A DNA stretch of 64,000 bases from positions 1-64,000 of the forward strand of contig NW_021831752.1 in the NCBI RefSeq assembly GCF_006345805.1. Direction: 5' to 3'. The stretch is from Octopus sinensis (Eukaryota). The notes beneath the pieces are model-generated. The model did no database searches and was not told the DNA's origin. It saw only the letters and a list, made by a program, of their open reading frames with translations. Of the stretch, positions 1 to 62,360 are shown one piece after another; the stretch's first letter is position 1; every line of letters begins with the position of its first letter. Both the position numbers and the translations under genes were made by a program.

Positions 1-1710
1 TTGCATACACAGACTGTTGACTATCTGGCCACGCAGTGTGGTATGATTCTAAACAGTGACTATTTCTGAAGTTCTGCTTAATCAGGTCCTCCAGATGTGC
101 CAGCCTGGGGCGTTTTTTACCGTGCAATCAACTTTCGGTTAATCTGTGAGCCTTTTTGTGTCTCCTTGATTCGCCTCCTGTTGGACCAGGCGTAGGAAAT
201 GGACGGTTCAAAGTATTGACGATAAATATTTGCCAATTCCGGGTGGGATTCGTTTTCCTATAAACCTGATAGGCTTCTGAGCACGTTCGTTTTTTTCTCA
301 CATTTACAAAGTAGGTTGTCTGTGTGAGGAGAGAAGCAGGGGTGAGAGTTGTGTTGAAGGGTATGGACACATTTTTGACTTCAAATCGACCGTCTCCCTT
401 GGCAGACTTGGCAACGTTTACACGAGTCGGTTGTCAGTTAGCCATACGTTGAGTCGAACCAAGTTAGCTTGGAGCCTTTCAGACAATGTCATTCGCACAT
501 GAAAAGAATAGCATCATTATAGAGGGCGGAAGATTTTCCAGGAAAAAGTTGAAAAGGGCCGGGGATAATGGAGATCCCTTGGGTACTCTGTTGGGCAGGA
601 GTCGAAAAGTGGACTTCCTCTTCGTCCACTTAGGAGGTTAATGATCCATAGTTTGAGTTTCGCCGGAAATTCAGTTTGGCATATCTTCCTTGATAAGAGC
701 TTTCTCGAGACAGAATCGAGAGCTTTGTGGATGTCTATGGAGCAAAACACGGTCTTTTGGTGCCTCAGTTTGCTTGCAAAACTAGTACGAACGAATTTTG
801 TCTAAAACTCTTTTATTCTTTCAAGAACCATTTTTTTAGGATTTTTGACATGACGCAGAACAGGAAAACCAGCCTAAAAGAAGCCGGGTCGTTTCTTGGT
901 CTTCCAGTATCGACCTTATTAGTGCTTGCTTCTATAATGACGGAATCAGATTATGCTCGATCGACTAGTTGAATATAGCCGTTAGAAACTAATTCGACAC
1001 AAAGATTTCTTAATAGAATGACCGGGATTCTATCTGATACGGATCATTAAGTCATTCGGTTGGTTTTCTTGAGGCTATTTCTTTCCTTCTTTGGCTAGTA
1101 GCAGCGTGAGGTTGTCGTTTGGGTATAGCCATTGCTCTTGCTTCCAGAATAATCGTCATGAAGAAGCCGATTGCATTGTCGAGAGAACTAAATTGCAATT
1201 CTTTAATTTTAAATTCAAGATCTCCTGGCCAGTTTGCCGCATTATAATTGTATGAAACAAAGACCTTGCTGGTGATAACTTCCCTTCACCGTGATCGGGT
1301 TGTGGTCGCTTCTCGCTTCATAGAAGACTGACCAGACCGTAGTCGATACGAAAGATGAAGAGTATATCGGGTGATGTAGGTCTATCAGTCACTTTGAGCG
1401 GAGTCCTTGTGTTCCTCGGTGGATCGTTCAGAATTGTTAGGGAGTAGATTGGGAAAGTAAAAGTTTCCCTTTCGTATCCGCGACTGAATTGACCCTCAAA
1501 AAGGAGTGTTTCAGGTGGGCGCATAAGATGACCCCATCGATGCGTGCCAGTTTAGAGAGAGCTCAGGAAGAAATCGGTCTTAGGTAGAGTGCGTCGTCCT
1601 GAATGAGAATGCCGCCAGGGGGACGAGTTTTAATGATTCTTTTCCGGTGGACATTGAGTGCCCCCTCAGCGTTTCCAAGTCCGTTTGAGTTGCGAGAATC
1701 AATCGAATTG
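1..1710 (-). mobile_element. Decayed APE-endonuclease/RT non-LTR retrotransposon (LINE), copy 1
   Basis: Minus strand shows APE C-terminal motifs (LTILNDPPRNTR...TSPDILF...SDHNPITV) and RT motifs (NDPASFRLVFLFCVMSKILKKMVLERI; SIDIHKALDSVSR; VPKGSPLSPALFNFFL), with stops and frameshifts. Confidence 0.85.
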
Positions 1711-1860
1711 GTGAACCACATAACGAATAAGTTATCCATCAAAAAACAAGTTTGGATTCTGGAAAATTACCAGTAAAGTCGAGCGTCTTATTTTATTATA
1801 ATATTTCATAATTTAAGAAGAGATTTATATTTAAATATTTTTGTTGTGAATTTGCTTTTC

Positions 1861-2183
1861 ATGGACGCATTTCTTGAATTAGACCCTTCCAAGATTCAAA
1901 TTTCTGACACTCTTCAAAACCTTCTCCTCAAGTAATATAATAATAAACAATTAGCAGTCCGGAAGGATCCTGTGCACATAAGATTGTGGAAGAGTTGAAG
2001 GCTAAAATAACGTCACTACGTTCCCAAATAGACTCGTTAGGAGAACTGAAGGAAACAGCGAGCCAATTGGCTGACATTGAGAAGCACTGTAAAGAAATTC
2101 TTGCAGTTAAAACGAGTTCGTTGGAGTATATTCGTCAACAAGTTAACCAACATTTACAAACTAATCACCTTAAAAATGATTAA
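1861..2183 (+). CDS. Small ~100-aa coiled-coil protein, 2 exons, copy 1
   Basis: ATG 1861 (MDAFLELDPSK...LLL); 23-nt intron GTAATATAATAATAAACAATTAG; exon 2 continues in frame into ORF 1986-2183 (EELKAKITSLRSQIDSL...). Confidence 0.7.
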
Positions 2184-2979
2184 TTTTATATTCGTATTGT
2201 TCTATTAATACAGAGAACACTGCAATACTCCATTTGACTTGCCAAGGTCTGTCCCGTCCACTGCATGTCTTTAGGCATTTCGCACTTGCCTAAGTACGAG
2301 TAGGCAATTCCTAATTATTTGCTGATTTTCAATTTAAATAAGCATAAATAGGGAGCCCTACAACGATGTTTTAATAATTCCTGGAAGCACGTTCTTGATC
2401 GATCTTTCATTTGGAAAGGAATCGAATCACTTTCAGTTCAGTCAAAGTAAAAAAGTCGGGAACTAAATTTTTATTGGTGCCCTTTATTTATCATATCAGA
2501 CTTTTCTCATTTGCCGTGATGATCAGGAAATTAGCACTGCAAGATAAAATGGTAGAAGGTGGCCATTGAGAATTTGTGTTATATGTTTGCCGTTGTTCTG
2601 CAACCTGCGTGGTTTGCGAAGGAAGGGAGATTTGTTCTGTGGTATTTTAATGTACTTATTTCTCCCAAAATATCGACGTGATTTTAAAAGTTAGATATTG
2701 TCATTTATAGAAGTTTGTACGACCTCATAGTGGATATCCTGATAGTGAGTAAATATTCACCAAATTTTCTTTTTCTGTCACAGGTGTTGAGTTTTGAAGT
2801 TGGTGAGTGGATTTGTGTTCGTTTAATGTATGATACTGCAATTGTTAATTATGAAAGTCTCCTATACACATCCACCCTACTTGAGAAAAATTTTCTAAAA
2901 TATTAAAAGACTAAAATTGAGTTCAAAACAAATTTAACTTGAAAATTATTAATTTATTTTTTTTAATGTTAAATAATTA

Positions 2980-3734
2980 ATGAGGTCTCCTGTTGTCGTC
3001 CGTTCTTTTCGAAAAAGACAGCAACAGTAATTGAGACTATAAAAATATCAATTTCAGTTAATATTTCTTCACGGCTTGGGAGATTGGGGTTCTGTCTTTG
3101 GTGTAGCCTGATGTAGAGATTCTTGGGCTTCACAGTTTGCAGAGACAGGTTTTAGTCAAATCGAAAGTAATTTGGCCACACGGTATTCGTTAATTTGTAT
3201 ATTCTAGACCATCGAGGCAACTCTCGGTTGCTTTGGATTGCCCGTCCCTGCTTGGTTTGACATCCTCGGAGTCTCCATGGACAGTGCCGAGGACGCCGAT
3301 GGAATAAAACGAGGCCTCGCTGATCGGTCTCCCTGTATAAGCAATTTCAGTCCAGTCGCTAATAGATGAGGAGATTAGGAAAGGAATCGATCTCGGAGAA
3401 TTATTGTGGGCGGTTTCAGTCAGGGTGGGGCCGTGGCACTCCACTTGCTCTCAGTGTGGGGTTGCACTGGGCGGGGTGATTGGGATCAGCACGTGGTTGC
3501 CACTTCACAAAACATTCGAAAATGTTGGCAGTTTTGTCCCAATATTGCTTTTGCCATGGGGAAGATGATTCGATTGTTCCCTATGAGTATGCACGGACGA
3601 CACTGTCAGTGTTGACTGACCGGGCTGGCTGTGCCAATGTCACATTCAAAGCATACTCCAGTATGGGACACAATACATCGAGGATGAGATTGGGATGTTA
3701 TTCATTTTATCACAAAATGTCTCCCGGACATTAG
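2980..3734 (+). pseudogene. LYPLA1: Frameshifted copy of acyl-protein thioesterase (pseudogene or unpolished assembly copy)
   Basis: GFSQGG and CHGEDD...MGH motifs are split across frames by small deletions relative to 15448-16205. Confidence 0.6.
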
Positions 3735-3987
3735 TTTATTATCATACTTTAAATTACGTTGGTGCTTTATGAGTGAGGAAACCATTACTCAGTCGATTCT
3801 TAATCCACATTTTGCAAAACTGTCGCCTCCCGTGTTAATGCAATGTTTGTCCAAAACTTATCCCCATATTGGGAAATTTAGACAACAGAATATTGGTTTA
3901 AAAGTCAATAGAGGTATACTGCAAGGAGATTTTAATTTCGGTATAGGAAATAATTTAAGTTAATTGAATAAGTGATATCTCTAATAC

Positions 3988-6900
3988 GTTAGGGTTTGGG
4001 TCAAAGTTAGGATTCAGATTTTGAATATTTATGTTGTCATTTGCCAACGTTAGGGTTTGGGTTAAGTTAGGATTCAGATTTGAATATATTTATGTTGTCA
4101 TTGCCAACGTTAGGGTTTGGTTAAGTTAGGATTCAGATTTTGAATATATTTATGTTGTCATTTGCCAACGTTAGGGTTTGGGTTAAAGTTGGATTCAGAT
4201 TTTGAATATTTTTATGTTGTCACTTGCCAACGTAGTGTTTGGGTTAATGTTAGGATTCAGATTTTGAATATATTTATGTTGTCACTTGCCAACGTTAGGG
4301 TTTAGGTTAAGGTTAGGATTCAGATTTTGAATATATTTATGTTGTCATTTGCCAACGTTAGGGTTTGGGTTAAGGTTAGGATTCAGATTTTGAATATATT
4401 TATGTTGTCATTTGCCAACGTTAGGGTTTAGGTTCAGGTTAGGGTTCAGATTTTGAATATATTTATGTTGTCATTTGCCAACGTTAGGGTTTGGGTTAAG
4501 GTTAGGATTCAGATTTTGAATATATTTATGTTGTCATTTGCCAACGTTAGGGTTTGGGTTAAGGTTAGGATTCAGATTTTGAATATATTTATGTTGTCAT
4601 TTGCCAACGTTAGGGTTTGGGTTAAAGTTAGGATTCAGATTTTGAATATATTTATGTTGTCATTTGCCAACGTTAGGGTTTGGGTTAAAGTTAGGATTCA
4701 GATTTTGAATATATTTATGTTGTCACTTGCCAACGTTAGGGTTTAGGTTAAGGTTAGGATTCAGATTTTGAATATATTTATGTTGTCATTTGCCAACGTT
4801 AGGGTTTGGGTTAAAGTTAGGATTCAGATTTTGAATATATTTATGTTGTCACTTGCCAACGTTAGGGTTTGGATTAAAGTTAGGATTCAGATTTTGAATA
4901 TATTTATGTTGTCATTTGCCAACGTTAGGGTTTGGGTTAAGGTTAGGATTCAGATTTTGAATATATTTATGTTGTCATTTGCCAACGTTAGGGTTTAGGT
5001 TAAGGTTAGGGTTCAGATTTTGAATATATTTATGTTGTCATTTGCCAACGTTAGGGTTTGGGTTAAGGTTAGGATTCAGATTTTGAATATATTTATGTTG
5101 TCACTTGCCAACGTTAGGGTTTGGGTTAAGGTTAGGATTCAGATTTTGAATATATTTATGTTGTCACTTGCCAACGTTAGGGTTTGGGTTAAGGTTAGGA
5201 TTCAGATTTTGAATATATTTATGTTGTCATTTGCCAACGTTAGGGTTTAGGTTAAGGTTAGGATTCAGATTTTGAATATATTTATGTTGTCACTTGCCAA
5301 CGTTAGGGTTTAGGTTAAGGTTAGGATTCAGATTTTGAATATATTTATGTTGTCATTTGCCAACGTTAGGGTTTGGGTTAAGGTTAGGATTCAGATTTTG
5401 AATATATTTATGTTGTCACTTGCCAACGTTAGGGTTTAGGTTAAGGTTAGGATTCAGATTTTGAATATATTTATGTTGTCATTTGCCAACGTTAGGGTTT
5501 GGGTTAAGGTTAGGATTCAGATTTTGAATATATTTATGTTGTCATTTGCCAACGTTAGGGTTGGGTTAAAGTAGGATTCAGATTTTGAATATATTTTGTT
5601 GTCACTTGCAACGTTAGGGTTTAGGTTAAGGTTAGGATTCAGATTTTGAATAATTTATGTTTCATTTGCCAACGTTAGGGTTTGGGTTAAAGTTAGGATT
5701 CAGATTTTGAATATATTATGTTGTCACTTGCCAACGTAGGGTTGGATTAAAGTTAGGATTCAGATTTTGAATATATTTATGTTGTCATTTGCCAACGTTA
5801 GGGTTTGGGTTAAGTTAGGATTCAGATTTTGAATATATTTATGTTGTCATTTGCAACGTTAGGGTTTGGGTTAAAGTTAGGATTCAGATTTTGAATATAT
5901 TTGTGTCACTTGCCAACGTTAGGGTTTAGGGTAAGGTTAGGATTCAGATTTGAATATATTATGTGTCATTTGCCAACGTTAGGGTTTGGGTTGAGGTAGA
6001 TTCAGATTTTGAATATATTTATGTTGTCACTTGCCAACGTTAGGGTTTAGGTTCAGGTTAGGGTTCAGATTTTGAATATATTTATGTTGTCATTTGCCAA
6101 CGTTAGGGTTTGGGTTAAAGTTTGGATTCAGATTTTGAATATTTTTATGTTGTCACTTTGCCAACGTTAGTGTTTGGGTTAATGTTAGGATTCAGATTTT
6201 GAATATATTTATGTTGTCACTTGCCAACGTTAGGGTTTGGGTTATAGTTAGGATTCAGATTTTGAATATATTTATGTTGTCACTTGCCAACGTTAGGGTT
6301 TAGGTTAAGGTTAGGATTCAGATTTTGAATATATTTATGTTGTCATTTGCCAACGTTAGTGTTTGGGTTAAAGTTAGGATTCAGATTTTGAATATATTTT
6401 GTTGTCACTTGCCAACGTTAGGGTTTAGGTTAGGTTAGGATTCAGATTTTGAATATTTATGTTGTCATTTGCCAACGTTAGGGTTGGGTTGAGGTTAGGA
6501 TCAGATTTTGAATATATTTATGTTGGCACTTGCCAACGTTAGGGTTAGGTTAAGGTTAGGATTCAGATTTTGAATATATTTATGTTGTCATTGCCAACGT
6601 TAGGGTTTGGGTTGAGGTTAGGATTCAGATTTTGAATATATTTATGTTGTCACTTGCCACGTTAGTGTTTGGGTTAATGTTAGGATTCAGATTTTGAATA
6701 TATTTATGTTGTCACTGCCAACGTTAGGGTTTGGGTTATAGTTAGGATTCAGATGATATATATTTATGTTGTCACTTGCCAACGTTAGGGTTTGGGGTAA
6801 GGTTAGGATTCAGATTTTGAATATATTTTGTGTCATTTGCCAACGTTAGGGTTGGGTTGAGGTAGGATTCAGATTTTGAATATATTTATGTTGTCACTTT

Positions 6901-8062
6901 GCCAACGTTAGTGTTTGGGTTAATGTTAGGATTCAGATTTTGATATATTTATGTTGTCACTTGCCAACGTTGGGTTTAGGTTAAGGTAGGATTCAGATTT
7001 TGAATATATTTATGTTGTCATTTGCCAACGTTAGGGTTTGGGTTGAGGTTAGGATTCAGATTTGAATATATTTATGTGTCACTTGCCAACGTTAGGGTTT
7101 AGGTTAAGGTTAGGATTCAGATTTGAATATTTATGTTGTCATTTGCCAACGTTAGGGTTTGGGTTGAGGTTAGGATTCAGATTTTAATAATTATGTTGTC
7201 ACTTTGCCAACGTTAGTGTTGGGGTTAATGTTAGGATTCAGATTTTGAATATATTTATGTTGTCACTTGCCAACGTTAGGGTTTAGGTTAAGGTTAGGAT
7301 TCAGATTTTGAATATTTATGTTGTCATTTGCCAACGTTAGGGTTGGTTGAGGTTAGGATTCAGATTTTGAATATATTTATGTTGTCACTTGCAACGTTAG
7401 GGTTTGGTTCAGTTAGGGTTCAGATTTTGAATATATTATGTTGTCATTGCCAACGTTAGGGTTTGGGTTGTTAAAGTTTGGATTCAGATTTTGAATATTT
7501 TTATGTTGTCACTTTGCCAACGTTAGTGTTTGGGTAATGTTAGGATTCAGATTTTGAATATATTTATGTTGTCATTTGCCAACGTTAGGGTTTGGGTTAA
7601 AGTTTGGATTCAGATTTTGAATATTTTTATGTTGTCACTTTGCCAACGTTAGTGTTTGGGTTAATGTTAGGATTCAGATTTTGAATATATTTATGTTGTC
7701 ATTTGCCAACGTTAGGGTTTGGGTTAAAGTTTGGATTCAGATTTTGAATATTTTTATGTTGTCACTTTGCCAACGTTAGTGTTTGGGTTAATGTTAGGAT
7801 TCAGATTTTGAATATATTTATGTTGTCACTTGCCAACGTTAGGGTTTGGGTTATAGTTAGGATTCAGATTTTGAATATATTTATGTTGTCACTTGCCAAC
7901 GTTAGGGTTTAGGTTAAGGTTAGGATTCAGATTTTGAATATATTTATGTTGTCACTTGCCAACGTTAGGGTTTGGGTTAAAGTTAGGATTCATATTTTGA
8001 ATATATTTATGTTGTCATTTGCCAACGTTAGGGTTTGGGGAAGGTTAGGATTCAGATTTTGA
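3988..8062 (+). repeat. Tandem array of ~65 copies of a 63-bp telomere-like satellite
   Basis: Unit (e.g. 4483-4545) GTTAGG GTTTGG GTTAAG GTTAGG ATTCAG ATTTTG AATATATTTATGTTGTCATTTGCCAAC. The 21-aa periodic ORFs confirm the 63-bp period. Confidence 0.98.
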
Positions 8063-9795
8063 GCATCCCTTTGAGGTTTGTAAAGACAGAATTCCTTCAT
8101 TGCTGTTATTTGTTTTTCTTTCATATGGATACCCGAGCCTTTTGGTTGCTGGTTATTCCTTTATTTCCTCTTCTTGTGGTGTACAGCAAGGCGATCCTTT
8201 GGGCCCATTATTATTTGCCCTTTCCGTGGATTTTATTGCCCGTAAGAATTTGTCGCCTCTGAATATTTGGTATTTGGATGATTGTACTATTGGTGGTCCG
8301 CCCGATATTTTGATAAAGGACTTGGAATCTCTAATCCCAGCTTTGTCATCCATTGGTCTCGAAATTAATTCTCTCAAATCTGAAATCGTAAATGTTAACA
8401 TCGATCGTGTTAGTTTTCAAAACATTTTTTCTCAGTTTCGAGGCCTTTTGCCCAATCTGAGACATACTTCCACTGCTGATCTCGAAATCTTGGGTGCTCC
8501 GATCTACGACCAATCCGCCATTCGTATTCTTAATTCCAAGAGGAATGCCCTTTCTTCCCTTTGTGATAAACTTGCAGATATTGATCCCCACCCTGCTTAT
8601 TTCATTCTCAAAAATTATCTTCTGATCCCGAAAATCAATTATGTCCTAAGGAGTTCCCGCTGCTTTTCTATTCCTATTGCCGTGGATTCTTTCGACGCTC
8701 TGGTGCGTTCTTCCGCTGAGAAGATTTTTAATGTCAAGTTTGATGACGTTGGTTGGTGTCAGGCCAAACTTCCTGTATCTTTTGGCGGTCTGGGGCTTCG
8801 CTCCGCGCTCGACCTTTCTCTTCCCGCTTTCCTTTCATCTTCTTCAGGATTGTATCTTCTTGTCCATAAGATTCTTGAAAAATCACCCGAATCAACTTTG
8901 GACTCTGATATCAATTCTGCACTCTTCTTTGCTTTGGAAGGAAAAGCATTTCGTCTTACCGTCAGAACGATCTCTCCAACGTGTATGGGACAAAATTATT
9001 TGTGAATATTACGTTGACTCGTTGGAGCGTCTCTTGGACCAGCACAGACTAGCTTGCTTCCGTGCCAGTCGCCAACCGTATTCTGGCTCCTGGCTTAACT
9101 GCCTTCCCACGACCCATTTGGATACCTGCCTCGACTCTGATGCCCTCCGTTTTGGAATATGCCTTCGTCTGGGCCTACCGATTTGTAATCCCCACCCCTG
9201 CCGGTGTGGATCAACGATGGACACATACGGGCTCCATGCCCTTTCCTGCAAGAAAAGCGCAGGTCGCATACCTCGTCATTCGGCTCTTAACAAGATCATT
9301 CTCCATGCCCTCGAAAAGGCAGGGTATCCTTCTGTCCTTGAGCCAATTGGTCTTGACCGTGGTGATGGAAAAAGGCCTGATGGCTCGACGTTGTTCGCTT
9401 TCGACGCTGGTAAACCACTAGTTTGGGATGCCACGTGTGTTGATTCCTTCTCTAAGTCGGCCATCAACGAATCCGCCTCTCTGCCGGGTCCCATGCTAAT
9501 AGGGCTGAACATACAAAATCCGAAAAATACCAGGGCTTGTTAAACGGCTTTTGGTTTTGGCCAATTGTTGTTGAGACTTAGTGCGTCTTTGGCACAAAGA
9601 CAGTTGATCATCTAAAGAAACTTGGCCACCTCTGTTCTTTACGCTTCAAGGATCCTAGGGAATTTACATTCCTAATCCAAAGGATCCTGTTGGCCGTTGT
9701 GCGTGGGAACAGCTGTTCCATCCGGCTTGCTGGCCGATTAATTTATGATTAATTTAGCTTTCCATATTTTTAATAAATATAACTTCAAGAATTGT
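8063..9795 (+). mobile_element. 5'-truncated CRE-clade non-LTR retrotransposon (RT, CCHC knuckle, restriction-like endonuclease), frameshifted
   Basis: GVQQGDPLGPLLF, IWYLDD, AKLPVSFGGLGLRS (8100-9005); CRCG...HALSC and KRPDG...LVWDATCVDS (8677-9543); C-terminal FLIQRILLAVVRGN. Starts mid-RT directly after the last satellite base. Confidence 0.9.
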
Positions 9796-10434
9796 TATTT
9801 AATCTACTTTAAATACTGTTATATATTTGTATCTAGACCAATGCTGCTTTTGTTACAACATTCACGTTAAAGTTATAATTTGAGAAATTCTGATTACGTA
9901 ATCTCACGATATCACTCAATTTGATAAAACTGCGTGTCACATTCCTATTGCTGCAGCACAATTTGTGATGTTAAAATGATTTCTAAGGAATAATATCCAA
10001 ATTATGTATTCATTGAAATAATCAACGTTAAATTCCGATATCTGTGTTTGTAGATATTAGTAAATTTCATTCTCAGCTATCAACTCGTGATTACCCCGCC
10101 CACAAATCTCGACTTATTTAAATAAAACTCAATTCATTTATGTATGAAAACAAAACCAGTAAATTCATTACTTCGGTGGAAACCCTATACACCTTCGAGA
10201 AAATTCGTCTGAGTCATCATTTTAGATAAATTGCACATGTAAAAAGGTATTAAGAGGCAAATATAATAATTCTAATTACACGATATTTCCAAATCTGGAT
10301 TGCAGTTTGAAGACCGAAGACAATTATGCTTTTGGCTTCTTTTGATCTCTTTCGCAGTTACTACTTCAATTAAATAGATAAAAGTTTTTGAATATTTTTT
10401 TCTTAATAATTTATAAATTTTTATTTCATTACAA

Positions 10435-11950
10435 ATGAGTTTAGGTAGCTTATGGCGTTATTTTTTTAAGTTTTTCAAGAAATTGGTTCGATTGAATTTG
10501 ATTCTCGGCTAAAGAAATCATGCATGACTGTTCTTCCCCCAAACTTTACCGAATCCTTTCTTTTAATTTCCCACGACAGTTCTGTCTTTGCACTAACAAT
10601 TTCCGAAACGAATGAAAAAGTGATCTTGAGGAAATCCCATGTCTTTCTTTTACTTCCCGGTAAACTACATTCATTTCCAAATTTAGAAAATTTCACATAT
10701 TATTATCTTCACGTTTTCACACATTCTTATCTTAGTTTCCTGGCTTTCGCGGGAATTCCCACAGTATAAGAATGTTAAACCAGCTAGGAAAATGTTGACA
10801 AGTCGGCGATTTTATTCATCCAACAAATTTCTGGTGCCAAGTCTGTGAATGATTTTTGTGGGGGTAGTAATGAGTGATCGATGAGTAGGCAACCGAGTTC
10901 AGCTGGCGTTAAAAAAATGTCCAACTGCTATCCTGAGTTGCGGGTTCAATTAATCGAGCCATAACCTGCAGTATTGGGGAATGCGAAACCCCATACATGA
11001 TTATATTCGAGGATGTCACTCGAGTCATCAAATCCGAGGGAAATCAAGTTCACCAATTCAACTTGCCTGAAATATTTCCAGAGTTCAGTCTTGTTTCAGA
11101 AAAGTTGGGTTTATCTAATATTTTTCAAGAATTGTATTTTGTGAAATAATTGTGTGTGGGGGAAACTCGAGAATTACGGCCGTTTCGACTTTTTCTTTCA
11201 ACATCCACGTGTTCTCTGTTTTCAATGGTTAGGATAATTCACGTTTACTGACCAGGAAGAGCCACCGAAACTTATAAATGCTGTTTTAATTCAGAAATTA
11301 CTCATATTTCTCTATTCAAAAAAGGACCAACTTGGAGCGATTTCAGTTAGTTTTGTTGTATTGTTTAGATTTGGACAATTTTTATTGCATCGCCGTGGCA
11401 TTCGCGAACCATCCAGTTTTCGTATTCAGGTTGATTCCCTTTGAAGTACTTTCAAGCAATGTGGCCGGGGAGGGCGCCATAACAAAGGATGTAATGCCTT
11501 TTGTTGCGGGAGATTTGACGACTGGTCTGTGTATAGCTGACGTTGATTTCGATGGACTCCCTGAGATATTAGTCACCACATTTTCGAATGTACTGTGCCT
11601 AATTACATTCCAGAATCTCTTCGTCTTCAAATTGGTGGACAGTCCTACTTTGGTTCCTAAAGAGGTTGCTTCGCCTCCAACAGCCATCGATGCAGCTGAG
11701 ATGACACAAGTGATAAGTTCAACTAATGATGTGTTGTATACACCACAAAGAGCTCAAAAAATATATCAATGCAGATTCTCGTCCCCACTGTTGAACGTAT
11801 TTCGAATTGATGTAGAATTTGACGTTGTATCCTATTACCTGGTTGTGTCTTTGAGAGGAGTGCACCTTCTACAAGTATTATATATTTAAATGTTAGCATA
11901 ACTCTGCCATTATCGAACAAGTCGTGCTTGAGAAAATTGCACTGCTATAA
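10435..11950 (+). CDS. KPTN: Kaptin (KICSTOR subunit), multi-exon
   Basis: IADVDFDGLPEILVTT and RFSSPLL...VVSLRGVHLLQ match the kaptin C-terminal motifs. ATG 10435 is followed by a 26-nt intron; a 22-nt last intron precedes HNSAIIEQVVLEKIALL*. Confidence 0.8.
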
Positions 11951-12199
11951 AATCGCGATTGTTAACTATTATTACATGTTTATTAATTCTCATCAACTTG
12001 AAAGATATTTAGAACAGTTAAGGATATTGTTTTAATTATAAAACGCAGTTGGTTCCTATAATCATTAACTCTCTCTTGATCCTAAAAATTGTGTGGCTGG
12101 CACGAGTTTTGTTATGATTCATGGCATCTCCAAAGTGCTATGTTGTTGTTGTTTCTATAATAGCGAGATGGATCCTGGATTGGCTGTTTGTGAAGCTCG

Positions 12200-14163
12200 G
12201 GTATTCTGCAAGTAATATAAACCCTACAAGCGCAGGATTGCTTACTTTCAAATATGCAATTGTCGATTCTTGAATATTAAGTCACTTAAGGTCACCCAGA
12301 GGAAACATTTCGTAGCCGAATCAATGGTAAATTACTAAATTCGATTGTGTTTAAGAAACCAAATATCTGCATGCCCCCAATCGTTTTCCAAATAGAATAA
12401 TTCCCCACTAACCGAAGAATTGTACTGTCTTTTTTAGGATAAGAATTTGTTTTTTGCATACACAGACTGTTGACTATCTGGCCACGCAGTGTGGTATGAT
12501 TCTAAACAGTGACTATTTCTGAAGTTCTGCTTAATCAGGTCCTCCAGATGTGCCAGCCTGGGGCGTTTTTTACCGTGCAATCAACTTTCGGTTAATCTGT
12601 GAGCCTTTTTGTGTCTCCTTGATTCGCCTCCTGTTGGACCAGGCGTAGGAAATGGACGGTTCAAAGTATTGACGATAAATATTTGCCAATTCCGGGTGGG
12701 ATTCGTTTTCCTATAAACCTGATAGGCTTCTGAGCACGTTCGTTTTTTTCTCACATTTACAAAGTAGGTTGTCTGTGTGAGGAGAGAAGCAGGGGTGAGA
12801 GTTGTGTTGAAGGGTATGGACACATTTTTGACTTCAAATCGACCGTCTCCCTTGGCAGACTTGGCAACGTTTACACGAGTCGGTTGTCAGTTAGCCATAC
12901 GTTGAGTCGAACCAAGTTAGCTTGGAGCCTTTCAGACAATGTCATTCGCACATGAAAAGAATAGCATCATTATAGAGGGCGGAAGATTTTCCAGGAAAAA
13001 GTTGAAAAGGGCCGGGGATAATGGAGATCCCTTGGGTACTCTGTTGGGCAGGAGTCGAAAAGTGGACTTCCTCTTCGTCCACTTAGGAGGTTAATGATCC
13101 ATAGTTTGAGTTTCGCCGGAAATTCAGTTTGGCATATCTTCCTTGATAAGAGCTTTCTCGAGACAGAATCGAGAGCTTTGTGGATGTCTATGGAGCAAAA
13201 CACGGTCTTTTGGTGCCTCAGTTTGCTTGCAAAACTAGTACGAACGAATTTTGTCTAAAACTCTTTTATTCTTTCAAGAACCATTTTTTTAGGATTTTTG
13301 ACATGACGCAGAACAGGAAAACCAGCCTAAAAGAAGCCGGGTCGTTTCTTGGTCTTCCAGTATCGACCTTATTAGTGCTTGCTTCTATAATGACGGAATC
13401 AGATTATGCTCGATCGACTAGTTGAATATAGCCGTTAGAAACTAATTCGACACAAAGATTTCTTAATAGAATGACCGGGATTCTATCTGATACGGATCAT
13501 TAAGTCATTCGGTTGGTTTTCTTGAGGCTATTTCTTTCCTTCTTTGGCTAGTAGCAGCGTGAGGTTGTCGTTTGGGTATAGCCATTGCTCTTGCTTCCAG
13601 AATAATCGTCATGAAGAAGCCGATTGCATTGTCGAGAGAACTAAATTGCAATTCTTTAATTTTAAATTCAAGATCTCCTGGCCAGTTTGCCGCATTATAA
13701 TTGTATGAAACAAAGACCTTGCTGGTGATAACTTCCCTTCACCGTGATCGGGTTGTGGTCGCTTCTCGCTTCATAGAAGACTGACCAGACCGTAGTCGAT
13801 ACGAAAGATGAAGAGTATATCGGGTGATGTAGGTCTATCAGTCACTTTGAGCGGAGTCCTTGTGTTCCTCGGTGGATCGTTCAGAATTGTTAGGGAGTAG
13901 ATTGGGAAAGTAAAAGTTTCCCTTTCGTATCCGCGACTGAATTGACCCTCAAAAAGGAGTGTTTCAGGTGGGCGCATAAGATGACCCCATCGATGCGTGC
14001 CAGTTTAGAGAGAGCTCAGGAAGAAATCGGTCTTAGGTAGAGTGCGTCGTCCTGAATGAGAATGCCGCCAGGGGGACGAGTTTTAATGATTCTTTTCCGG
14101 TGGACATTGAGTGCCCCCTCAGCGTTTCCAAGTCCGTTTGAGTTGCGAGAATCAATCGAATTG
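12200..14163 (-). mobile_element. Decayed APE/RT LINE, copy 2 (left boundary approximate)
   Basis: Matches 1-1710 over 12454-14163. Confidence 0.8.
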
Positions 14164-14313
14164 GTGAACCACATAACGAATAAGTTATCCATCAAAAAAC
14201 AAGTTTGGATTCTGGAAAATTACCAGTAAAGTCGAGCGTCTTATTTTATTATAATATTTCATAATTTAAGAAGAGATTTATATTTAAATATTTTTGTTGT
14301 GAATTTGCTTTTC

Positions 14314-14636
14314 ATGGACGCATTTCTTGAATTAGACCCTTCCAAGATTCAAATTTCTGACACTCTTCAAAACCTTCTCCTCAAGTAATATAATAATAAA
14401 CAATTAGCAGTCCGGAAGGATCCTGTGCACATAAGATTGTGGAAGAGTTGAAGGCTAAAATAACGTCACTACGTTCCCAAATAGACTCGTTAGGAGAACT
14501 GAAGGAAACAGCGAGCCAATTGGCTGACATTGAGAAGCACTGTAAAGAAATTCTTGCAGTTAAAACGAGTTCGTTGGAGTATATTCGTCAACAAGTTAAC
14601 CAACATTTACAAACTAATCACCTTAAAAATGATTAA
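14314..14636 (+). CDS. Small ~100-aa coiled-coil protein, 2 exons, copy 2
   Basis: Same sequence as 1861-2183. Confidence 0.7.
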
Positions 14637-15447
14637 TTTTATATTCGTATTGTTCTATTAATACAGAGAACACTGCAATACTCCATTTGACTTGCCAAGG
14701 TCTGTCCCGTCCACTGCATGTCTTTAGGCATTTCGCACTTGCCTAAGTACGAGTAGGCAATTCCTAATTATTTGCTGATTTTCAATTTAAATAAGCATAA
14801 ATAGGGAGCCCTACAACGATGTTTTAATAATTCCTGGAAGCACGTTCTTGATCGATCTTTCATTTGGAAAGGAATCGAATCACTTTCAGTTCAGTCAAAG
14901 TAAAAAAGTCGGGAACTAAATTTTTATTGGTGCCCTTTATTTATCATATCAGACTTTTCTCATTTGCCGTGATGATCAGGAAATTAGCACTGCAAGATAA
15001 ATGGTGAGAAGGTGTGGCCATTGAGAATTTGTGTTATATGTTTGCCGTTGTTCTGCAACCTGCGTGGTTTGCGAAGGAAGGGAGATTTGTTCTGTGGTAT
15101 TTTAATTGTACTTATTTCTCCCAAAATATCGACGTGATTTTAAAAGTATTAGATATTGTCATTTTATAGAAGTTTGTACGACCTCATAGTGGATATCCTG
15201 ATAGTGAGTAAATATTCACCAAATTTTCTTTTTCTGTCACAGGTGTTGAGTTTTGAAGTTTGGTGAGTGGACTTGTGTTCGTTTTAATGTAATGATAATA
15301 CTGCAATTGTTAATTATGAAAGTCTCCTATACACATCCACCCTACTTGAGAAAAATTTTCTAAAAAATTATTAAAGACTAAAATTGAGTTCAAAACAAAT
15401 TTAACTTGAAAATTATTAATTTATTTTTTTTAATGTTAAATTAATTA

Positions 15448-16205
15448 ATGAGGTCTCCTGTTGTCGTCCGTTCTTTTTCGAAAAAGACAGCAACAGTAAT
15501 TGAGACTATAAAATATCAATTTCAGTTAATATTTCTTCACGGCTTGGGAGATTGTGGGTTCTGTCTTTGGTGTAGCCTGATGTAGAGATTCTTGGGCTTC
15601 ACAGTTTGCAGAGACAGGTTTTAGTCAAATCGAAGTAATTTGCCCACACGCGTATTCGTTAATTTGTATATTCTAGACCATCGAGGCAACTCTCGGTTGC
15701 TTTTGGATTGCCCGTCCCTGCTTGGTTTGACATCCTCGGAGTCTCCATGGACAGTGCCGAGGACGCCGATGGAATAAACGAGGCCTCGCTGATCGGTCTC
15801 CCTGTATAAGCAATTTCAGTCCAGTCGCTAATAGATGAGGAGATTAGGAAAGGAATCGATCCTCGGAGAATTATTGTGGGCGGTTTCAGTCAGGGTGGGG
15901 CCGTGGCACTCCACTGTGCTCTCAAGTGTGGGGTTGCACTGGGCGGGGTGATTGGGATCAGCACGTGGTTGCCACTTCACAAAACATTCGAAAATGTTGG
16001 CAGTGTCCCAATATTGCTTTGCCATGGGGAAGATGATTCGATTGTTCCCTATGAGTATGCACGGACGACACTGTCAGTGTTGACTGACCGGGCTGGCTGT
16101 GCCAATGTCACATTCAAAGCATACTCCAGTATGGGACACAATACATCCGAGGATGAGATGTGGGATGTTATTCATTTTATCACAAAATGTCTCCCGGACA
16201 TTTAG
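15448..16205 (+). CDS. LYPLA1: Acyl-protein thioesterase / lysophospholipase (LYPLA1/2 family), 4 exons
   Basis: Removing introns of 30, 28 and 25 nt gives IFLHGLGDCGDSW...ICPHAP...PAWFDI...GGFSQGG...HGEDD..VP...MGH, with the Ser-Asp-His triad. Confidence 0.92.
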
Positions 16206-16244
16206 TTTTATTATCATACTTTAAATTACGCTTTGTCTGGCTTT

Positions 16245-16430
16245 ATTGAGTGAGGAAACCATTTTACTCAGTCGATTCTTAATCCACATTTTGCAAAACT
16301 GTCGCCTCCCGTGTTTAATGCTAATGTTTGTCCAAAACTTATCCCCATATTGGGAAATTTAGACAACAGAATATTGGTTAAAGTCAATAGAGGTGTACTG
16401 CAAGGAGATTTTTAATTTCGGCTATAGGAA
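16245..16430 (+). mobile_element. Short R4/Dong-like RT remnant between the thioesterase and PKG 3' ends (also at ~3770-3950)
   Basis: LIHILQNCRLPCLMLMFVQNLSPYWEI...KVNRGVLQGD resembles the RT at 61461-61910 (EILENSELPNW...IPNWKV...ERGILKGD). Confidence 0.5.
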
Positions 16431-16489
16431 ATAATTTAAGTTAATTGAATAAGTGATATCTCTAATACCATAATCCAGTTAATATCAAT

Positions 16490-19974: not shown

Positions 19975-20345
19975 TGTCCTTGAAGATGCAAAACGTCAAG
20001 ACGGCTGTACACTTTCGCTTTTGAATCCCGGAAGCAGCTCGTTTGGGACGTCACCTGTGCCGACTCTTTCGCCAAGGGAGCTTTGAATTCCACGGCTTGT
20101 CGTCCCGGTTCGTCGGCCGAGAAGCCCGAATTCGCGAAACTAACGAAATACGAGGATTTGCGCGATCGATTTTGCTTTTGGGCAATTGCCATCGATAATT
20201 CCTCTGTTTTTGGGGTCAAGACGCTTGCTCATCTTAAGAAACTTTGCCGTCTGTGCACCTATCGCTCAAGAGATCCCAGGGAATTTATATTCCTTATTCA
20301 GAGGATCTCGCTGGCTGTTTTACGCGGGAATTGTCTTTACTAATT
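19975..20345 (+). mobile_element. CRE-clade 3' fragment (endonuclease domain)
   Basis: DAKRQDGCTL...LVWDVTCADS and REFIFLIQRISLAVLRGN, homologous to 9350-9720. Confidence 0.8.
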
Positions 20346-21650: not shown

Positions 21651-21819
21651 CAATGTGATTATTGGACGGTTTAATGATTTTATTGTCAAAAAATATGGTA
21701 TGTCAGCAAAAATTAGTGTAAATCCTTTATAAAATACTTTTACCAATAATTATTACCTAAGATTAAAATTTACAAATCATTCCAAAACTTAAGTATTAAA
21801 ACAATTTACAATTTACCAC

Positions 21820-22047
21820 GGGCTTTTGGGCAATTGCCGTTGAGACTACCTGTGAGACGCTTGCTCATCTAAAGAAACTTGGCCGTCTGTGCACCCATCG
21901 CTCCAGAGACCCCAGGGAATTTATATTCCTTATTCAAAAAATCTCGCTGGCTGTTTTACGCGGGAATTGTCTCTTAATCCTGCGACCCGGTACTTAATAA
22001 CTAGCTTATTCCGTTTTCCATTTAAATATTAGAACTTGAATAAAAAA
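21820..22047 (+). mobile_element. CRE-clade 3' end with A-rich tail
   Basis: Nucleotide match to 20175-20340 and 9550-9790; ends GAATAAAAAAA. Confidence 0.8.
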
Positions 22048-22117: not shown

Positions 22118-22417
22118 TTCAAGTAGTTGAAAAAAAATTGATGAAAGTGGACCTGTGGTTTCTAAGAGGATGACTCGAAAGATTCTTTGATGACTCGAAA
22201 TAAATTATCCTTATCCAGTCGTTAAATTTACTAATTAATAGTCATTACCTCAGACTATTGCGTTTGAGAGTTTCAATGAGATGGGGATTTTCCAGGGGTC
22301 TCTAGTGACATCCATAATCGGCCTCCAATTTTAGTAGTTCGGTGCTTGAGGGAGTTATTAATATCAACTGTGACCTGAACAGTGAACGTGGTCGGTGCAT
22401 ACTTCCTTAATGTATTA

Positions 22418-23022
22418 TGTCGCGAGCGCTGCGAGCGATCGAGCGCTGAGAGCGATTCTGACGCCTAACAGCCTGTCATCAACAAATATTTTATTAAATT
22501 ATTTAAAATTTTAAACATGATTAAAATTAAAGATTGAAATAACTTAAGTTTTCCATTGAATCCCATAAAATAATATATAAGTAGACCTTAATATAAAAAG
22601 TAAAATCAATGAATACTGACGCTAATTTGGTTTAGGTTGTGAGGGGGGTCATATTTGACAGATCTCATTGTATTTCTCGTTCAATCTCTAAAATTAGGTC
22701 TTCTAATCACAAATTAACTTGTGGCAGATCAGGCTTGCTCCTTCAGAAAATTCTTGTTTTGGACATTTTAATCAATTTGAGCATTTAATTTTTTCTCATT
22801 ATTCTAAAATATCAATTATAAATCTTAAATATTATTTTTATTTATGAAATCGGTTTTTTTAAAAGCACATTACCTGCTTTGGCATCGATTTTAATTTTGT
22901 AATCGAATATATTGAAAACCCAAATCCAGCACGGGTATTTGTCCATTTTATGAATTGTTGATTGATCGCATCTAGAATTGAGTGATCGCTCGCTGCGCTC
23001 GGTCGCTGCAGCGCTCGCGACA
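22418..23022. mobile_element. 605-bp MITE with ~40-bp TGT...ACA TIRs and perfect 5-bp TSD (TATTA)
   Basis: Left end TGTCGCGAGCGCTGCGAGCGATCGAGCGC; right end ...GCGCTCGGTCGCTGCAGCGCTCGCGACA; TATTA at 22413-22417 and 23023-23027. Confidence 0.88.
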
Positions 23023-23101
23023 TATTAATTCTGATTAGATATAATTTATATTAAATCATTTGATTCTAACAAAAATACACAATTCAAATTAGACGGGGTT
23101 A

Positions 23102-45422: not shown

Positions 45423-46362
45423 TTAAGCGGAATATGACATCCTCGTTTGAATATACAACTCCTTCAGTTTGTCGAACCCGGAAAGCACCCCCGCCCCGGC
45501 AATCCCTCTCAGAATATTAGCCCCGGCGCCCTTCATGAGTGACTGATATCCATCGGAAATGACGATCTGTCGGAAGCAGTCCCACGATCCCTTATATTTA
45601 ACGGCCTCCCCGGACGTCATCATCATTCGTCGACGAATCGTGTCCACCGGATATGACAGCAGACCAGAAACGACCGTCACGTTGTAGCCCAAAATGAAAT
45701 TCATCATGAGGGAGTTCTCGTTGGGCAACAGTGGCTTGAGTGTGTCGTACAACCCAAAGTAGAATCCTCGATAAATGAATATTCCAGCACAAGAAATGTT
45801 GAATCCCCGGTAAAGGCCAACAAAGCCGTCTGATTTGATAGTCTTGGCGTAGACATCAATCAGTCCGTTGAACTGTCGTTCGGACATTCCCTTCGAGGTG
45901 GCCTTGGCGTCGTTGGCCAGTCGAGTCCGGGCATAGTCCAGGGAATAAACGAAGGCCAGAGACATACTCCCGGCCACTCCCCCAGAACATATATTCTTGG
46001 TCATTTTGTTGGCATAACTGTCCGTTTTATTCACTTTGAAGACGGCCTTGATTTGGTCCCGGAAGGCGAAATTGAGTGCCTGTGTGGGGAAGTAACGGAG
46101 GCAGTTGGCCAGATTCCCTCTCCAGAAGGAAAAGAGTCCTGAATGTAGAGAAGAGTATACCCTCAGCGTGATATGTTCTGGTGGTGCAGTCGATAATCCC
46201 ATTGTATGGATGAGAGAGACGGCCAGCCTTTATCATTTCGCTCTGATTCTGCACCAACAGTTTGATTCGCTCGATGGGAGCTGCCCCAGTCTTGGAAACC
46301 ACGGCTGCCAATCCGCTGAGAGCAAAACTCTCGAGAAACGACAACTCACTATCTTGACCCAT
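45423..46362 (-). CDS. Mitochondrial ADP/ATP carrier (SLC25 AAC), 2 exons
   Basis: [24 protein letters not shown] and the RRRMMM signature; a single 22-nt intron at 46139-46160 joins the two ORFs in frame. Confidence 0.96.
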
Positions 46363-49643: not shown

Positions 49644-50307
49644 TATTTGTGTTTATATTTTGTGGCTTGTTAAGAGCATTGTTCTTTACTCTTTTATGTA
49701 CAACGGGCGGACTAGCCAATGAACCTAACTAACTAATCTTGTGAGATTTGCAAGTGTGCATTTTACTTTGAGAGGCATTAATTGGCTATACTCTCGGGCA
49801 ATTGTAAGACAAAACAAATTTTATAAAAAAACTGCATAAAATTGATGTTAATTATGGAAAAAGTGGACTATGACTGAAACCTGCTTGTTGTGCGGTTGAA
49901 TTGGTTACTAGTGGCAGTCATTCTAGTCTAGTTATTTAATGTAATATATAAAATTAAAAAAACTCATTTTTCTAAAAATGCACTAATGAGGGCGCCAAGA
50001 CTGCATCTTGTTCTGGCATATTCGATTCCCACCGTATGAAAATGAGTTCTTGAAGATTAATTATGCTTAAAATTTGGCTCTGATGTGATCATCAGTTTGC
50101 GCAGTACTAATAAAAAGCATCGAAAGACCAGGATTAAAGAGGCTTAAGGCACATTATATAACAAAATAATAGTAAAAGAACTTGTCTGAAACTGTTGGAA
50201 ATCAATTATATTGTTAAGGAAGAAATTTATCAAATGATTATTTCTTTAAACAAACCTCATAAAAATAGGCAGTTTTTACCAAAGCACATCCTTTTGATAC
50301 TAATTAG

Positions 50308-62220: not shown

Positions 62221-62360
62221 ACATTATATTGCCTAAATTAAAATAATTTTTTTAATGAACACTTACAGCATGGATTGATCAGGCTATTTGATATATTTAT
62301 AGCACGGAAATTTATTGCGAGATGAAAATATAATTTAGTACGACGTGTTCTTATAATATA

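What the first reader, a model, noticed from the sequence alone, without database searches (positions are those of the whole stretch)
3988..8062. 63-bp TTAGGG-derived satellite: candidate non-canonical telomere repeat
Seen: each unit is six progressively degenerate GTTAGG hexamers (GTTAGG GTTTGG GTTAAG GTTAGG ATTCAG ATTTTG) plus a 27-nt tail. It has two small inverted repeats: ATTCA-gattt-TGAAT and GTTGTCA-yt-TGCCAAC (one mismatch). The array is strictly head-to-tail with the G-rich strand running 5'->3' away from the preceding unique DNA, which is the polarity of a chromosome end. No pure (TTAGGG)n tract is present. Known: most animals use short telomerase repeats, while some dipterans use long complex repeats kept by recombination. 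Inference: this may be the organism's actual telomere, or a telomere-derived subterminal satellite.
Basis: partly seen in the sequence, partly recalled or inferred. Interest (0 to 1): 0.85.

Follow-up and report, generated by a model that had tools for sequence, protein, structure and literature searches.

The report
Interstitial telomere-derived 63-bp satellite array
The 63-bp repeat is real and half of it clearly descends from TTAGGG telomere repeats, but here it lies inside gene-rich DNA of what looks like a dicyemid parasite genome, at the seam of a duplicated segment, so it is an internal telomere-like satellite and not a chromosome end.

Summary
Window 3986-8062 carries about 65 head-to-tail copies of a 63-bp unit made of 36 nt of decaying TTAGGG hexamers plus a 27-nt AT-rich tail, with the G-rich strand on +.

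The telomere reading does not hold for this locus.
- The array is followed, without any gap, by 56 kb of gene-bearing DNA.
- Its left flank (1-3985) occurs again at 12454-16468. There it runs straight into other sequence with no array, which gives an "empty site".
- Its right edge abuts a 5'-truncated R2-like retroelement.
- Its units carry ordered substitution variants and multi-unit blocks. That is the mark of unequal exchange, not of templated synthesis.

Introns of 24-28 nt, and transposon copies 99.8% identical to small "Octopus sinensis" scaffolds, point to a dicyemid parasite genome. One of those scaffolds holds a second, 2.4-unit copy of the same satellite, also internal. Another holds an internal (TTAGGG TCAGGG)n tract followed by one degenerate unit and the same 250-bp element.

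Best reading: a dispersed satellite derived from an interstitial telomeric tract.

Parts of the array and its left flank are low-quality assembly, so the duplication may be an artefact. Whether this repeat also caps chromosomes cannot be tested here.

The parts
3986..8062 (+). 63-bp satellite array of about 65 units, G-rich strand on +. It begins and ends inside the telomere-like half of the unit.
   Evidence: Clean blocks with no indels lie at 4292-5551, 6037-6352 and 7582-8062. Deletion-rich (noisy) blocks lie between them. Multi-unit variant blocks recur at 6037-6352 and 7394-7961.
1..3985 (+). Left flank, copy 1 of a direct duplication of at least 4 kb. It holds a frameshifted copy of an Abhydrolase_2 gene (last exon about 3404-3734). 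Positions 2549-3985 are low-quality sequence.
   Evidence: Self-BLAST matches 1-3987 to 12454-16468 at 98.7%. Positions 1-2548 are 100% identical. All 26 substitutions and 29 indel events lie in 2549-3987, and most are bases missing from copy 1. The exon is frameshifted here and intact in copy 2.
12454..16468 (+). Copy 2 of the same flank, which serves as the 'empty site'. After ...TCTCTAATAC it continues CATAATCCAG... with no array.
   Evidence: Alignment. Copy 1 continues ...TCTCTAATAC|GTTAGGGTTTGGG. The last 'AC' is shared with the end of the monomer (..CCAAC|GTTAGGG), giving a 2-nt microhomology at the junction.
15448..16205 (+). Intact phospholipase/carboxylesterase (Abhydrolase_2) gene with three GT..AG introns of 28, 25 and 24 nt (15558-15585, 15652-15676, 15796-15819). 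Its stop codon lies 263 nt before the duplication breakpoint.
   Evidence: PF02230, E 2e-33. Introns were read directly from the sequence.
8055..9731 (+). 5'-truncated remnant of an R2-like non-LTR retrotransposon: the reverse-transcriptase palm and thumb region plus a C-terminal CCHC / restriction-enzyme-like endonuclease region. It has two frameshifts (about 8910 and 9488) and abuts the array in sense orientation.
   Evidence: RVT_1. 66-69% identity to P0121, with homology starting within 8 nt of the array end. The best solved-structure matches are R2 proteins.
9732..12453 (+). Retroelement 3' tail plus unique DNA, lying between the retroelement remnant and copy 2 of the flank. It includes an ORF at 11290-11886 with an FG-GAP-like motif.
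   Evidence: No Pfam hit. No copy of the monomer.

Best explanation
This is an interstitial array of a dispersed satellite that arose from a decayed internal TTAGGG tract. It is not a chromosome end.

Proposed origin (inferred). The unit is one 27-nt AT-rich spacer plus one 36-nt degenerate telomere-like tract. Arrays have the form T-(spacer-T)n. This suggests that two telomere-like tracts flanking a spacer misaligned and generated the tandem array. Unequal exchange then expanded it and homogenised it in multi-unit blocks.

This copy (inferred). It sits as the junction piece of a direct duplication of at least 4 kb, possibly up to about 8.4 kb. It joins the 3' end of an Abhydrolase_2 gene copy to a point inside an R2-like retroelement, with 2 nt of microhomology on the left. 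That is what end-joining or template-switch repair leaves when it copies filler from a repeat elsewhere in the genome.

No cellular function is implied.

Shown: the repeat, its telomere-like half, its internal position, the empty site, the variant blocks, and a second internal locus. Inferred: the order of events, the repair mechanism and the dicyemid origin of the DNA.
For: - Internal position. Genes lie on both sides and there is no N: Abhydrolase_2, a cNMP-binding/PKG-like gene, kinesin, ADP/ATP carrier and RabGAP-TBC.
- Empty site. The left flank recurs at 12454-16468 and diverges exactly where the array starts.
- The array did not arise in place. The 27-nt tail has no similarity to either flank, and no solo monomers occur in the window.
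- Unequal exchange. Real substitution variants form repeated multi-unit blocks: g-e-d-f-b at 6037-6352, g-e-d-e-d-e-d-f-b at 7394-7961, and alternating two-unit patterns at 6415-7334.
- Second locus in the same or a very close genome. L005:3632-3783 holds 2.4 units at 96.6% identity and is internal on a 107.8-kb scaffold. Transposon copies shared with the window are 99.7-99.8% identical.
- Origin model. On the G strand, L003 reads (TTAGGG TCAGGG)n, then one degenerate unit, then a 250-bp element. L005 reads 2.4 units and then the same element. The window and L005 arrays both start and end in the telomere-like half.
- Known precedent: satellites with embedded TTAGGG motifs and interstitial telomeric blocks flanked by mobile elements (PMC4273535; PMC6410037; PMC5615363).
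Against: - Only 64 kb is visible, so the window could still lie near a chromosome end.
- The left junction and parts of the array are low-quality sequence. The duplication could be an assembly artefact, in which case the 'junction filler' story fails, though the internal right junction in clean sequence remains.
- Only two loci of the satellite were found, and about 180 kb of related scaffolds is a small, retroelement-biased sample.
- The telomere of dicyemids is not described in the genome papers read. So canonical TTAGGG ends are assumed from relatives, not shown.
- The origin model rests on three loci.
Confidence: 0.7

Rival explanations
1. Assembly artefact in the context. The satellite is real, but the layout flank-array-retroelement-flank was created when one locus was laid down twice, for example through an unmerged overlap, a haplotype or somatic variant, a circular molecule walked around, or a chimeric long read.
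For: Copy 1 of the flank is 100% identical to copy 2 for 2548 nt. It then abruptly carries about 2% errors biased towards missing bases, which break an exon that is intact in copy 2. The same error type fills patches of the array. The published Dicyema japonicum assembly merged Illumina and PacBio assemblies, scaffolded with long reads, closed gaps and removed haplotypes (PMC6736024). Dicyemids are reported to form extrachromosomal circles (PMC6543705).
Against: Both junctions are precise. The right one (8062/8063) lies in clean sequence. The left one shows a 2-nt microhomology typical of real repair events. The window holds no N.
Confidence: 0.3
2. Tandem repeat carried by a mobile element. 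The 63-mer would be the amplifiable end of a non-autonomous element (the 250-bp element 'E'), or of a telomere-attaching retroelement, and would spread with it.
For: In L005 and L003 the unit or units are followed on the G strand by the same 250-bp element at 92.6% identity. The order 'G-rich telomere-like repeats, then element' is the order left by retroelements primed from telomeric overhangs (own knowledge of endonuclease-deficient Penelope-like elements). Helitron and R2-like fragments lie nearby in both L005 and the window.
Against: The window array is not followed by element E. Only two copies of E were seen, and E has no defined ends or coding capacity. R2-like fragments are so dense, at 3-8 per 22 kb, that their adjacency means little.
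Confidence: 0.2
3. Subtelomeric satellite. The window would lie close to a chromosome end, and the array would be one of the degenerate telomere-like blocks that separate subtelomeric duplicated segments.
For: The array marks the boundary of a duplicated segment, as degenerate TTAGGG blocks do in human and yeast subtelomeres (PMC6410037; PMC5615363). The G strand points away from the left flank.
Against: The 56 kb beyond the array holds ordinary housekeeping genes (kinesin, ADP/ATP carrier, RabGAP) at high density, and no further telomere-like tract. The second locus sits about 77 kb into a 108-kb scaffold.
Confidence: 0.12
4. True chromosome end. The 63-mer, kept by telomerase with a long template or by recombination, would cap chromosomes, and the join to the retroelement would be a mis-join or a healed somatic break.
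For: The polarity is correct relative to the left flank. Half of the unit is telomere-like. No canonical tract lies in the window. The dicyemid telomere is not described in the papers read, and chromatin elimination is reported in the group.
Against: The array is internal in the assembly, with a clean right junction. Units are heterogeneous with block structure. The second copy has 2.4 units and is internal. TTAGGG-type tracts exist in the same genome. A 63-nt telomerase template would be far beyond any known one (own knowledge).
Confidence: 0.04

Closest known systems
PaB6 satellite of Prospero autumnale (PMC4273535)
   Same: A satellite whose monomer holds intact and degenerate TTAGGG motifs mixed with other sequence. 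It is amplified at non-terminal sites while chromosome ends keep TTAGGG.
   Different: PaB6 is a plant satellite with a 249-bp monomer, pericentromeric, in arrays large enough to see by FISH. Here the unit is 63 bp, the array is about 4 kb in gene-rich DNA, and its chromosomal position is unknown.
Interstitial telomeric sequences: short, heterochromatic and subtelomeric classes (PMC6410037)
   Same: Telomere-like repeats inside chromosomes. They are often degenerate, often flanked by mobile elements, are thought to be inserted at double-strand breaks, and are amplified by unequal crossing-over or slippage. The L003 (TTAGGG TCAGGG)n tract is a plain example.
   Different: The window array is not a run of hexamers. 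It is a compound 63-bp unit with a non-telomeric 27-nt part.
Degenerate TTAGGG blocks at the borders of subtelomeric duplicated segments in human and yeast
   Same: A telomere-like block sits exactly at the edge of a duplicated segment.
   Different: A subtelomeric location is not shown here. The two copies are only 12.4 kb apart and in direct orientation.
Complex terminal satellites of Chironomus (about 340-350-bp units kept by recombination)
   Same: Long tandem units that could, in principle, replace short telomerase repeats.
   Different: Those are terminal on all chromosomes and lack telomere-motif ancestry. This array is internal in the assembly, and TTAGGG-type tracts exist in the same genome.
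R2 / restriction-enzyme-like-endonuclease clade of non-LTR retrotransposons (for the flanking element)
   Same: A reverse transcriptase followed by a CCHC motif and a PD-(D/E)XK-like endonuclease region. The best solved-structure matches are R2 proteins. Copies are typically 5'-truncated.
   Different: No site specificity is evident. Copies lie in many different contexts, and homologous loci lack telomere-like targets.

Membership tests
Telomerase-made telomere repeat | Lies at the physical end of the chromosome | tested here: not met
   56 kb of gene-bearing DNA follows without any N. The second locus is internal on a 108-kb scaffold. True ends cannot be seen in a window.
Telomerase-made telomere repeat | Units copied from one RNA template, so near-uniform with no higher-order block structure | tested here: not met
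   About 10 polymorphic positions are arranged in recurring multi-unit blocks.
Telomerase-made telomere repeat | G-rich strand runs 5'->3' towards the end | tested here: met
   This holds relative to the left flank only (GC skew +0.47).
Telomerase-made telomere repeat | A telomerase RNA with a complementary template, plus TERT | not testable with these tools
   No Rfam family was hit in the window. The rest of the genome is not searchable here.
Recombination-maintained terminal satellite (Chironomus type) | Present at all or most chromosome ends, with canonical short repeats absent from the genome | tested here: inconclusive
   TTAGGG-type tracts do exist in the same genome (L003; L001). Chromosome ends could not be examined.
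Telomere-motif-containing satellite / amplified interstitial telomeric sequence | The monomer contains telomere-motif-derived sequence beyond chance | tested here: met
   22 of 24 matches, with 0 of 20,000 shuffles reaching that. The L005 variant is closer still to TTAGGG.
Telomere-motif-containing satellite / amplified interstitial telomeric sequence | Tandem array at a non-terminal site | tested here: met
Telomere-motif-containing satellite / amplified interstitial telomeric sequence | Occurs at more than one genomic locus | tested here: met
   The window, plus L005:3632-3783. A degenerate single unit lies in L003.
Subtelomeric satellite | Directly proximal to the terminal repeat tract | not testable with these tools
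   No chromosome-scale coordinates are available, and no terminal tract lies in the window.
R2-superclade non-LTR retrotransposon (flanking element) | Reverse-transcriptase domain followed by a C-terminal CCHC plus restriction-enzyme-like endonuclease motifs | tested here: met
   RVT_1. C..C..H..C, RH..N, E, RPDG and D.T motifs were read. R2 proteins are the best solved-structure matches. The endonuclease fold itself was not modelled.
R2-superclade non-LTR retrotransposon (flanking element) | Insertion into one specific target sequence | tested here: not met
   Copies lie in many unrelated contexts.
Dicyemid genome (source organism) | Spliceosomal introns mostly shorter than 30 nt, with high gene density | tested here: met
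   Introns of 28, 25 and 24 nt in the Abhydrolase_2 gene, and an inferred short intron of about 25 nt in the ADP/ATP carrier gene, estimated from tblastn segment ends. Among animals this is known only from Dicyema and myxobolid myxozoans (PMC13644364). The link to scaffolds of the host octopus assembly favours a dicyemid.

The most novel reading that the evidence does not exclude
The two versions of the flank, one running into normal sequence and one capped by a G-strand-outward telomere-like array, could be the intact and the broken-and-healed forms of one locus. Dicyemids are reported to eliminate chromatin and make DNA circles in somatic cells. On this reading the 63-mer, or the (TTAGGG TCAGGG)n family it derives from, would be what is added or recombined onto new ends, and the assembler strung the two forms together.
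Probability: 0.04. Interest if true: 0.85.

Novelty: new member of a known kind. Interest (0 to 1): 0.3.

Why it matters
As a telomere candidate it does not hold up, so the main value is to close that lead. What remains useful:
1. It gives a clear, small example of how a compound satellite unit can be born from a decayed internal telomere tract plus a spacer. Three loci appear to catch different stages.
2. It shows a satellite sitting exactly at a duplication breakpoint, with an 'empty' sister copy for comparison.
3. It gives sequence markers (the 63-mer, the (TTAGGG TCAGGG)n tract and element E) for asking what the still undescribed chromosome ends of dicyemids look like.
4. It carries a practical warning. 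Small scaffolds of a public octopus assembly, and the 'octopus' proteins predicted from them, look like parasite DNA.

Tried and rejected
- The exact monomor core was searched twice in metagenome contigs and once in viral contigs. No hits.
- A full-text paper search for the monomer string found nothing.
- Rfam on the whole window found nothing.
- The hairpin idea was rejected as no better than chance.
- A retroelement that targets telomere-like repeats was considered because the element is R2-like and abuts the array. It was rejected because no array lies on its 3' side, homologous loci lack such repeats, and the family is simply very dense.
- A second array at the window's far end was suspected from a 46-bp match to L005. 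It was rejected, because the similarity stops.
- The cephalopod origin suggested by the 'Octopus sinensis' names was rejected. Introns of 23-28 nt and the gene density do not fit a cephalopod.
- The array's open reading frame was searched against 1.8 billion proteins. The best hit, P0242 (E 1e-12), has a tandem 'FMLSSANVRVWES' motif that would back-translate to the monomer core. Its DNA could not be retrieved, so this was left as a lead.
- Protein searches with the ADP/ATP carrier and the hydrolase exon did not identify the species.
- RNA-mediated duplication by read-through from the retroelement to the hydrolase gene's 3' end was considered. It is unlikely because both copies keep the mini-introns.
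Full report
OBSERVATION. The array is real. Tandem Repeats Finder reports one array at 3986-8062 with period 63, 65.6 copies and 92% matches. Splitting it into units gives the consensus AAC-GTTAGG-GTTTGG-GTTAAG-GTTAGG-ATTCAG-ATTTTG-AATATATTTATGTTGTCAYTTGCC. All copies are head to tail on the + strand, and GC skew is about +0.47. The likeness to telomere repeats is not chance. The best 24-nt stretch matches (TTAGGG)n at 22 of 24 positions, and none of 20,000 shuffles of the monomer reaches that. No pure (TTAGGG)n tract occurs anywhere in the window. The two short inverted repeats exist but fold weakly, at -2.4 to -3.7 kcal/mol with z of -1.3 to -1.5, and about one shuffle in ten folds as well. 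They carry no weight.

ANATOMY OF THE ARRAY. Aligning every unit to the consensus shows two kinds of variation.
- Substitutions occur at about ten positions. Most lie in the telomere-like half, and the tail varies at only two. They are arranged in recurring multi-unit blocks. The series g-e-d-f-b at 6037-6352 returns as g-e-d-e-d-e-d-f-b at 7394-7961, a shorter e-d-b lies at the start, and two-unit alternations fill 6415-7334. This is the pattern left by unequal exchange within a satellite, not by copying from one RNA template.
- Patches at 3986-4291, 5552-6036 and 6353-7581 have 1-4 missing bases per unit and almost no extra bases. The blocks at 4292-5551, 6037-6352 and 7582-8062 have none. 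This is technical noise, explained in the next section.

SURROUNDINGS. The array is internal.
- Upstream lies the last exon of a phospholipase/carboxylesterase (Abhydrolase_2) gene.
- Downstream lie 56 kb without a single N. They carry a cNMP-binding/PKG-like gene, a kinesin motor, an ADP/ATP carrier and a RabGAP-TBC gene, together with transposon debris.
- Directly at the right edge (8055-9731, + strand) lies a 5'-truncated remnant of a non-LTR retrotransposon. It keeps the reverse-transcriptase palm (QQGDPLGPLLF, YLDD), the thumb, and a C-terminal CCHC plus restriction-enzyme-like endonuclease region, with two frameshifts. Protein homology begins within 8 nt of the last repeat unit. Its best solved-structure relatives are R2 proteins.

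THE DUPLICATION. A self-comparison gave the key result. Window 1-3987 is present again at 12454-16468 in the same orientation. Homology starts at window base 1, so the duplicated segment probably extends further upstream. The two copies are identical up to ...TCTCTAATAC. Then copy 1 continues GTTAGGGTTTGGG (the array), while copy 2 continues CATAATCCAG... into unrelated unique DNA. Copy 2 is therefore an empty site. The shared final 'AC' also matches the end of the monomer, which gives a 2-nt microhomology. Neither flank resembles the 27-nt tail, and no solo monomers occur in the window. So the unit was not born at this spot.

The copies are 100% identical for 2548 nt. From 2549 to the array, copy 1 carries 29 indel events (23 are missing bases) and clustered mismatches. 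These break the hydrolase exon, which is intact in copy 2. The same deletion-biased errors continue into the array patches. So the left flank and parts of the array are poorly polished consensus, and the duplication may be either real and recent or an assembly product.

SOURCE ORGANISM. The retroelement's best relatives are named 'Octopus sinensis' (66% identity, and 82% for a second fragment at 19984-20340). But the window is not cephalopod-like.
- The hydrolase gene (15448-16205) has three GT..AG introns of 28, 25 and 24 nt.
- The ADP/ATP carrier gene appears to have one of about 25 nt, inferred from the ends of its two tblastn segments.
- Genes lie every few kb.

Among 51 animal genomes, introns under 30 nt were found only in myxobolid myxozoans and in Dicyema japonicum (PMC13644364). 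D. japonicum lives in the kidney of O. sinensis. Its genome is 67.5 Mb with 36.7% GC, 49% repeats and many LINE copies. It was built by merging Illumina and PacBio assemblies, followed by long-read scaffolding, gap closing and haplotype removal (PMC6736024). That would explain a mosaic of clean and noisy stretches and possible false duplications.

The 'octopus' hits all lie on small unplaced scaffolds. One of them (L001) has a gene with 23-24-nt introns. Two others carry copies of a window transposon (50301-51801) at 99.7-99.8% identity. I conclude that the window and these scaffolds come from the same or a very close dicyemid. This is an inference. The species was not identified directly.

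RELATED LOCI. Those scaffolds served as about 180 kb of comparison sequence.
- L005:3632-3783 holds 2.4 units of the same satellite at 96.6% identity to the consensus. It is internal on a 107.8-kb scaffold. Its hexamer part is closer to the telomere motif: TTAGGG TTTGGG TTAAGG TTAGGG TTAGAT.
- L003:3120-3354 holds an internal (CCCTAA CCCTGA)n tract of 20 copies. Read on the G strand, it is followed by one degenerate 63-mer-like unit and then by a 250-bp element. The same element, at 92.6% identity, follows the L005 mini-array.
- L001:2786-3000 holds another degenerate TTAGGG-like repeat with a 46-51-bp period.
- Five further loci have none.

Both the window array and the L005 array begin and end inside the telomere-like half, so their form is T-(tail-T)n.

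WHAT IT IS AND HOW IT AROSE. The best-supported reading is a dispersed, telomere-derived satellite seen here as an internal 4-kb array. The likely history, which is inferred, runs as follows.
1. An internal telomere-like tract decayed and came to be split by a 27-nt AT-rich spacer.
2. Misalignment between the two telomere-like halves produced a tandem unit of spacer plus tract.
3. Unequal exchange expanded it and created the block structure.

At this locus the array is the seam between the end of one copy of a duplicated segment and a point inside a retroelement, joined with microhomology. End-joining or template-switching repair produces such seams when it copies filler from a repeat elsewhere. 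The adjacency to an R2-like fragment is probably incidental, because this family occurs 3-8 times per 22 kb.

THE TELOMERE HYPOTHESIS. It fails at this locus on four counts: position, the empty site, unit heterogeneity, and the short internal sister copy. It also sits poorly with the presence of hexamer-type TTAGGG tracts in the same genome. It cannot be excluded genome-wide. Chromosome ends are not visible here, and the two dicyemid genome papers read do not mention telomeres. The only experimentally determined telomere motif in the host group, the cephalopods, is TTAGGG (PMC13218726), which is the common marine-invertebrate motif (PMC5615363).

COMPARISON WITH KNOWN THINGS. Satellites built around telomere motifs are known. 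One example is PaB6, which has seven intact and five imperfect TTAGGG motifs in a 249-bp unit and is pericentromeric, while the true ends keep TTAGGG (PMC4273535). Also known are interstitial telomeric sequences flanked by mobile elements and amplified by unequal crossing-over, and degenerate telomere-like blocks at the borders of subtelomeric segments (PMC6410037; PMC5615363). This array is a new sequence member of that kind. No match was found in any searchable collection or paper.

VERDICT. Novelty: a new member of a known kind. Interest is modest. What lifts it slightly is the three-stage view of how the unit formed, the clean empty-site comparison, and the open question of dicyemid chromosome ends. 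The main uncertainty is assembly quality around the left junction.

Noticed in passing
L001, L003, L005-L010 (small scaffolds of GCA_006345805.1, labelled Octopus sinensis): These scaffolds look like dicyemid parasite DNA, not octopus. The evidence is 23-24-nt introns, 36-41% GC, and transposon copies 99.7-99.8% identical to window 50301-51801. The 'LOC1152xxxxx' reverse-transcriptase proteins predicted from them are then probably mislabelled.
   Followed up: partly
L003:3120-3354: An internal tract of 20 copies of a 12-bp unit CCCTAACCCTGA, which is (TTAGGG TCAGGG)n, with CGCTAA variants. It is flanked on one side by a 12/23-bp TTTAACGGCTCG repeat. It could hint at the lineage's real telomere variant.
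   Followed up: partly
L005:3784-4010 and L003:3015-2829: A conserved element of about 250 bp (92.6% identity) that follows telomere-like repeats on the G strand at both loci. It is absent from the window, and its nature is unknown.
   Followed up: partly
window 15448-16205 and 45441-46347: Ultra-short GT..AG introns: 28, 25 and 24 nt in the hydrolase gene, and an inferred one of about 25 nt in the ADP/ATP carrier gene. Gene spacing is very tight across the window.
   Followed up: yes
window 8055-9731, 19984-20340, 21791-21979; many sites in L001-L010: A very abundant R2-like LINE family with a restriction-enzyme-like endonuclease. It is mostly 5'-truncated and shows no evident target specificity. 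Window 20219-20339 and 21855-21976 share a 3' tail at 92.6% identity.
   Followed up: partly
window 22409-22456 and 22985-23030: Inverted termini made of 16-17-bp sub-repeats (CGAGCGCTGAGAGCGAT), about 620 bp apart. This looks like a small non-autonomous DNA transposon.
   Followed up: no
window 4432-4746 (array, frame +1): Because 63 is divisible by 3, one frame stays open across clean units, (NVRVWVKVRIQILNIFMLSFA)n, until a TAG in one variant. A predicted ENA protein (P0242) has a tandem 'FMLSSANVRVWES' motif that would back-translate to the monomer core. This suggests a related repeat with a 114-bp period in another sample, but its DNA could not be retrieved.
   Followed up: partly
window 50301-51801 and 62360-63340: A nearly intact integrase-bearing transposon fragment (rve) and a Helitron-type PIF1 helicase fragment. 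Both have close copies on L005 and L007.
   Followed up: no
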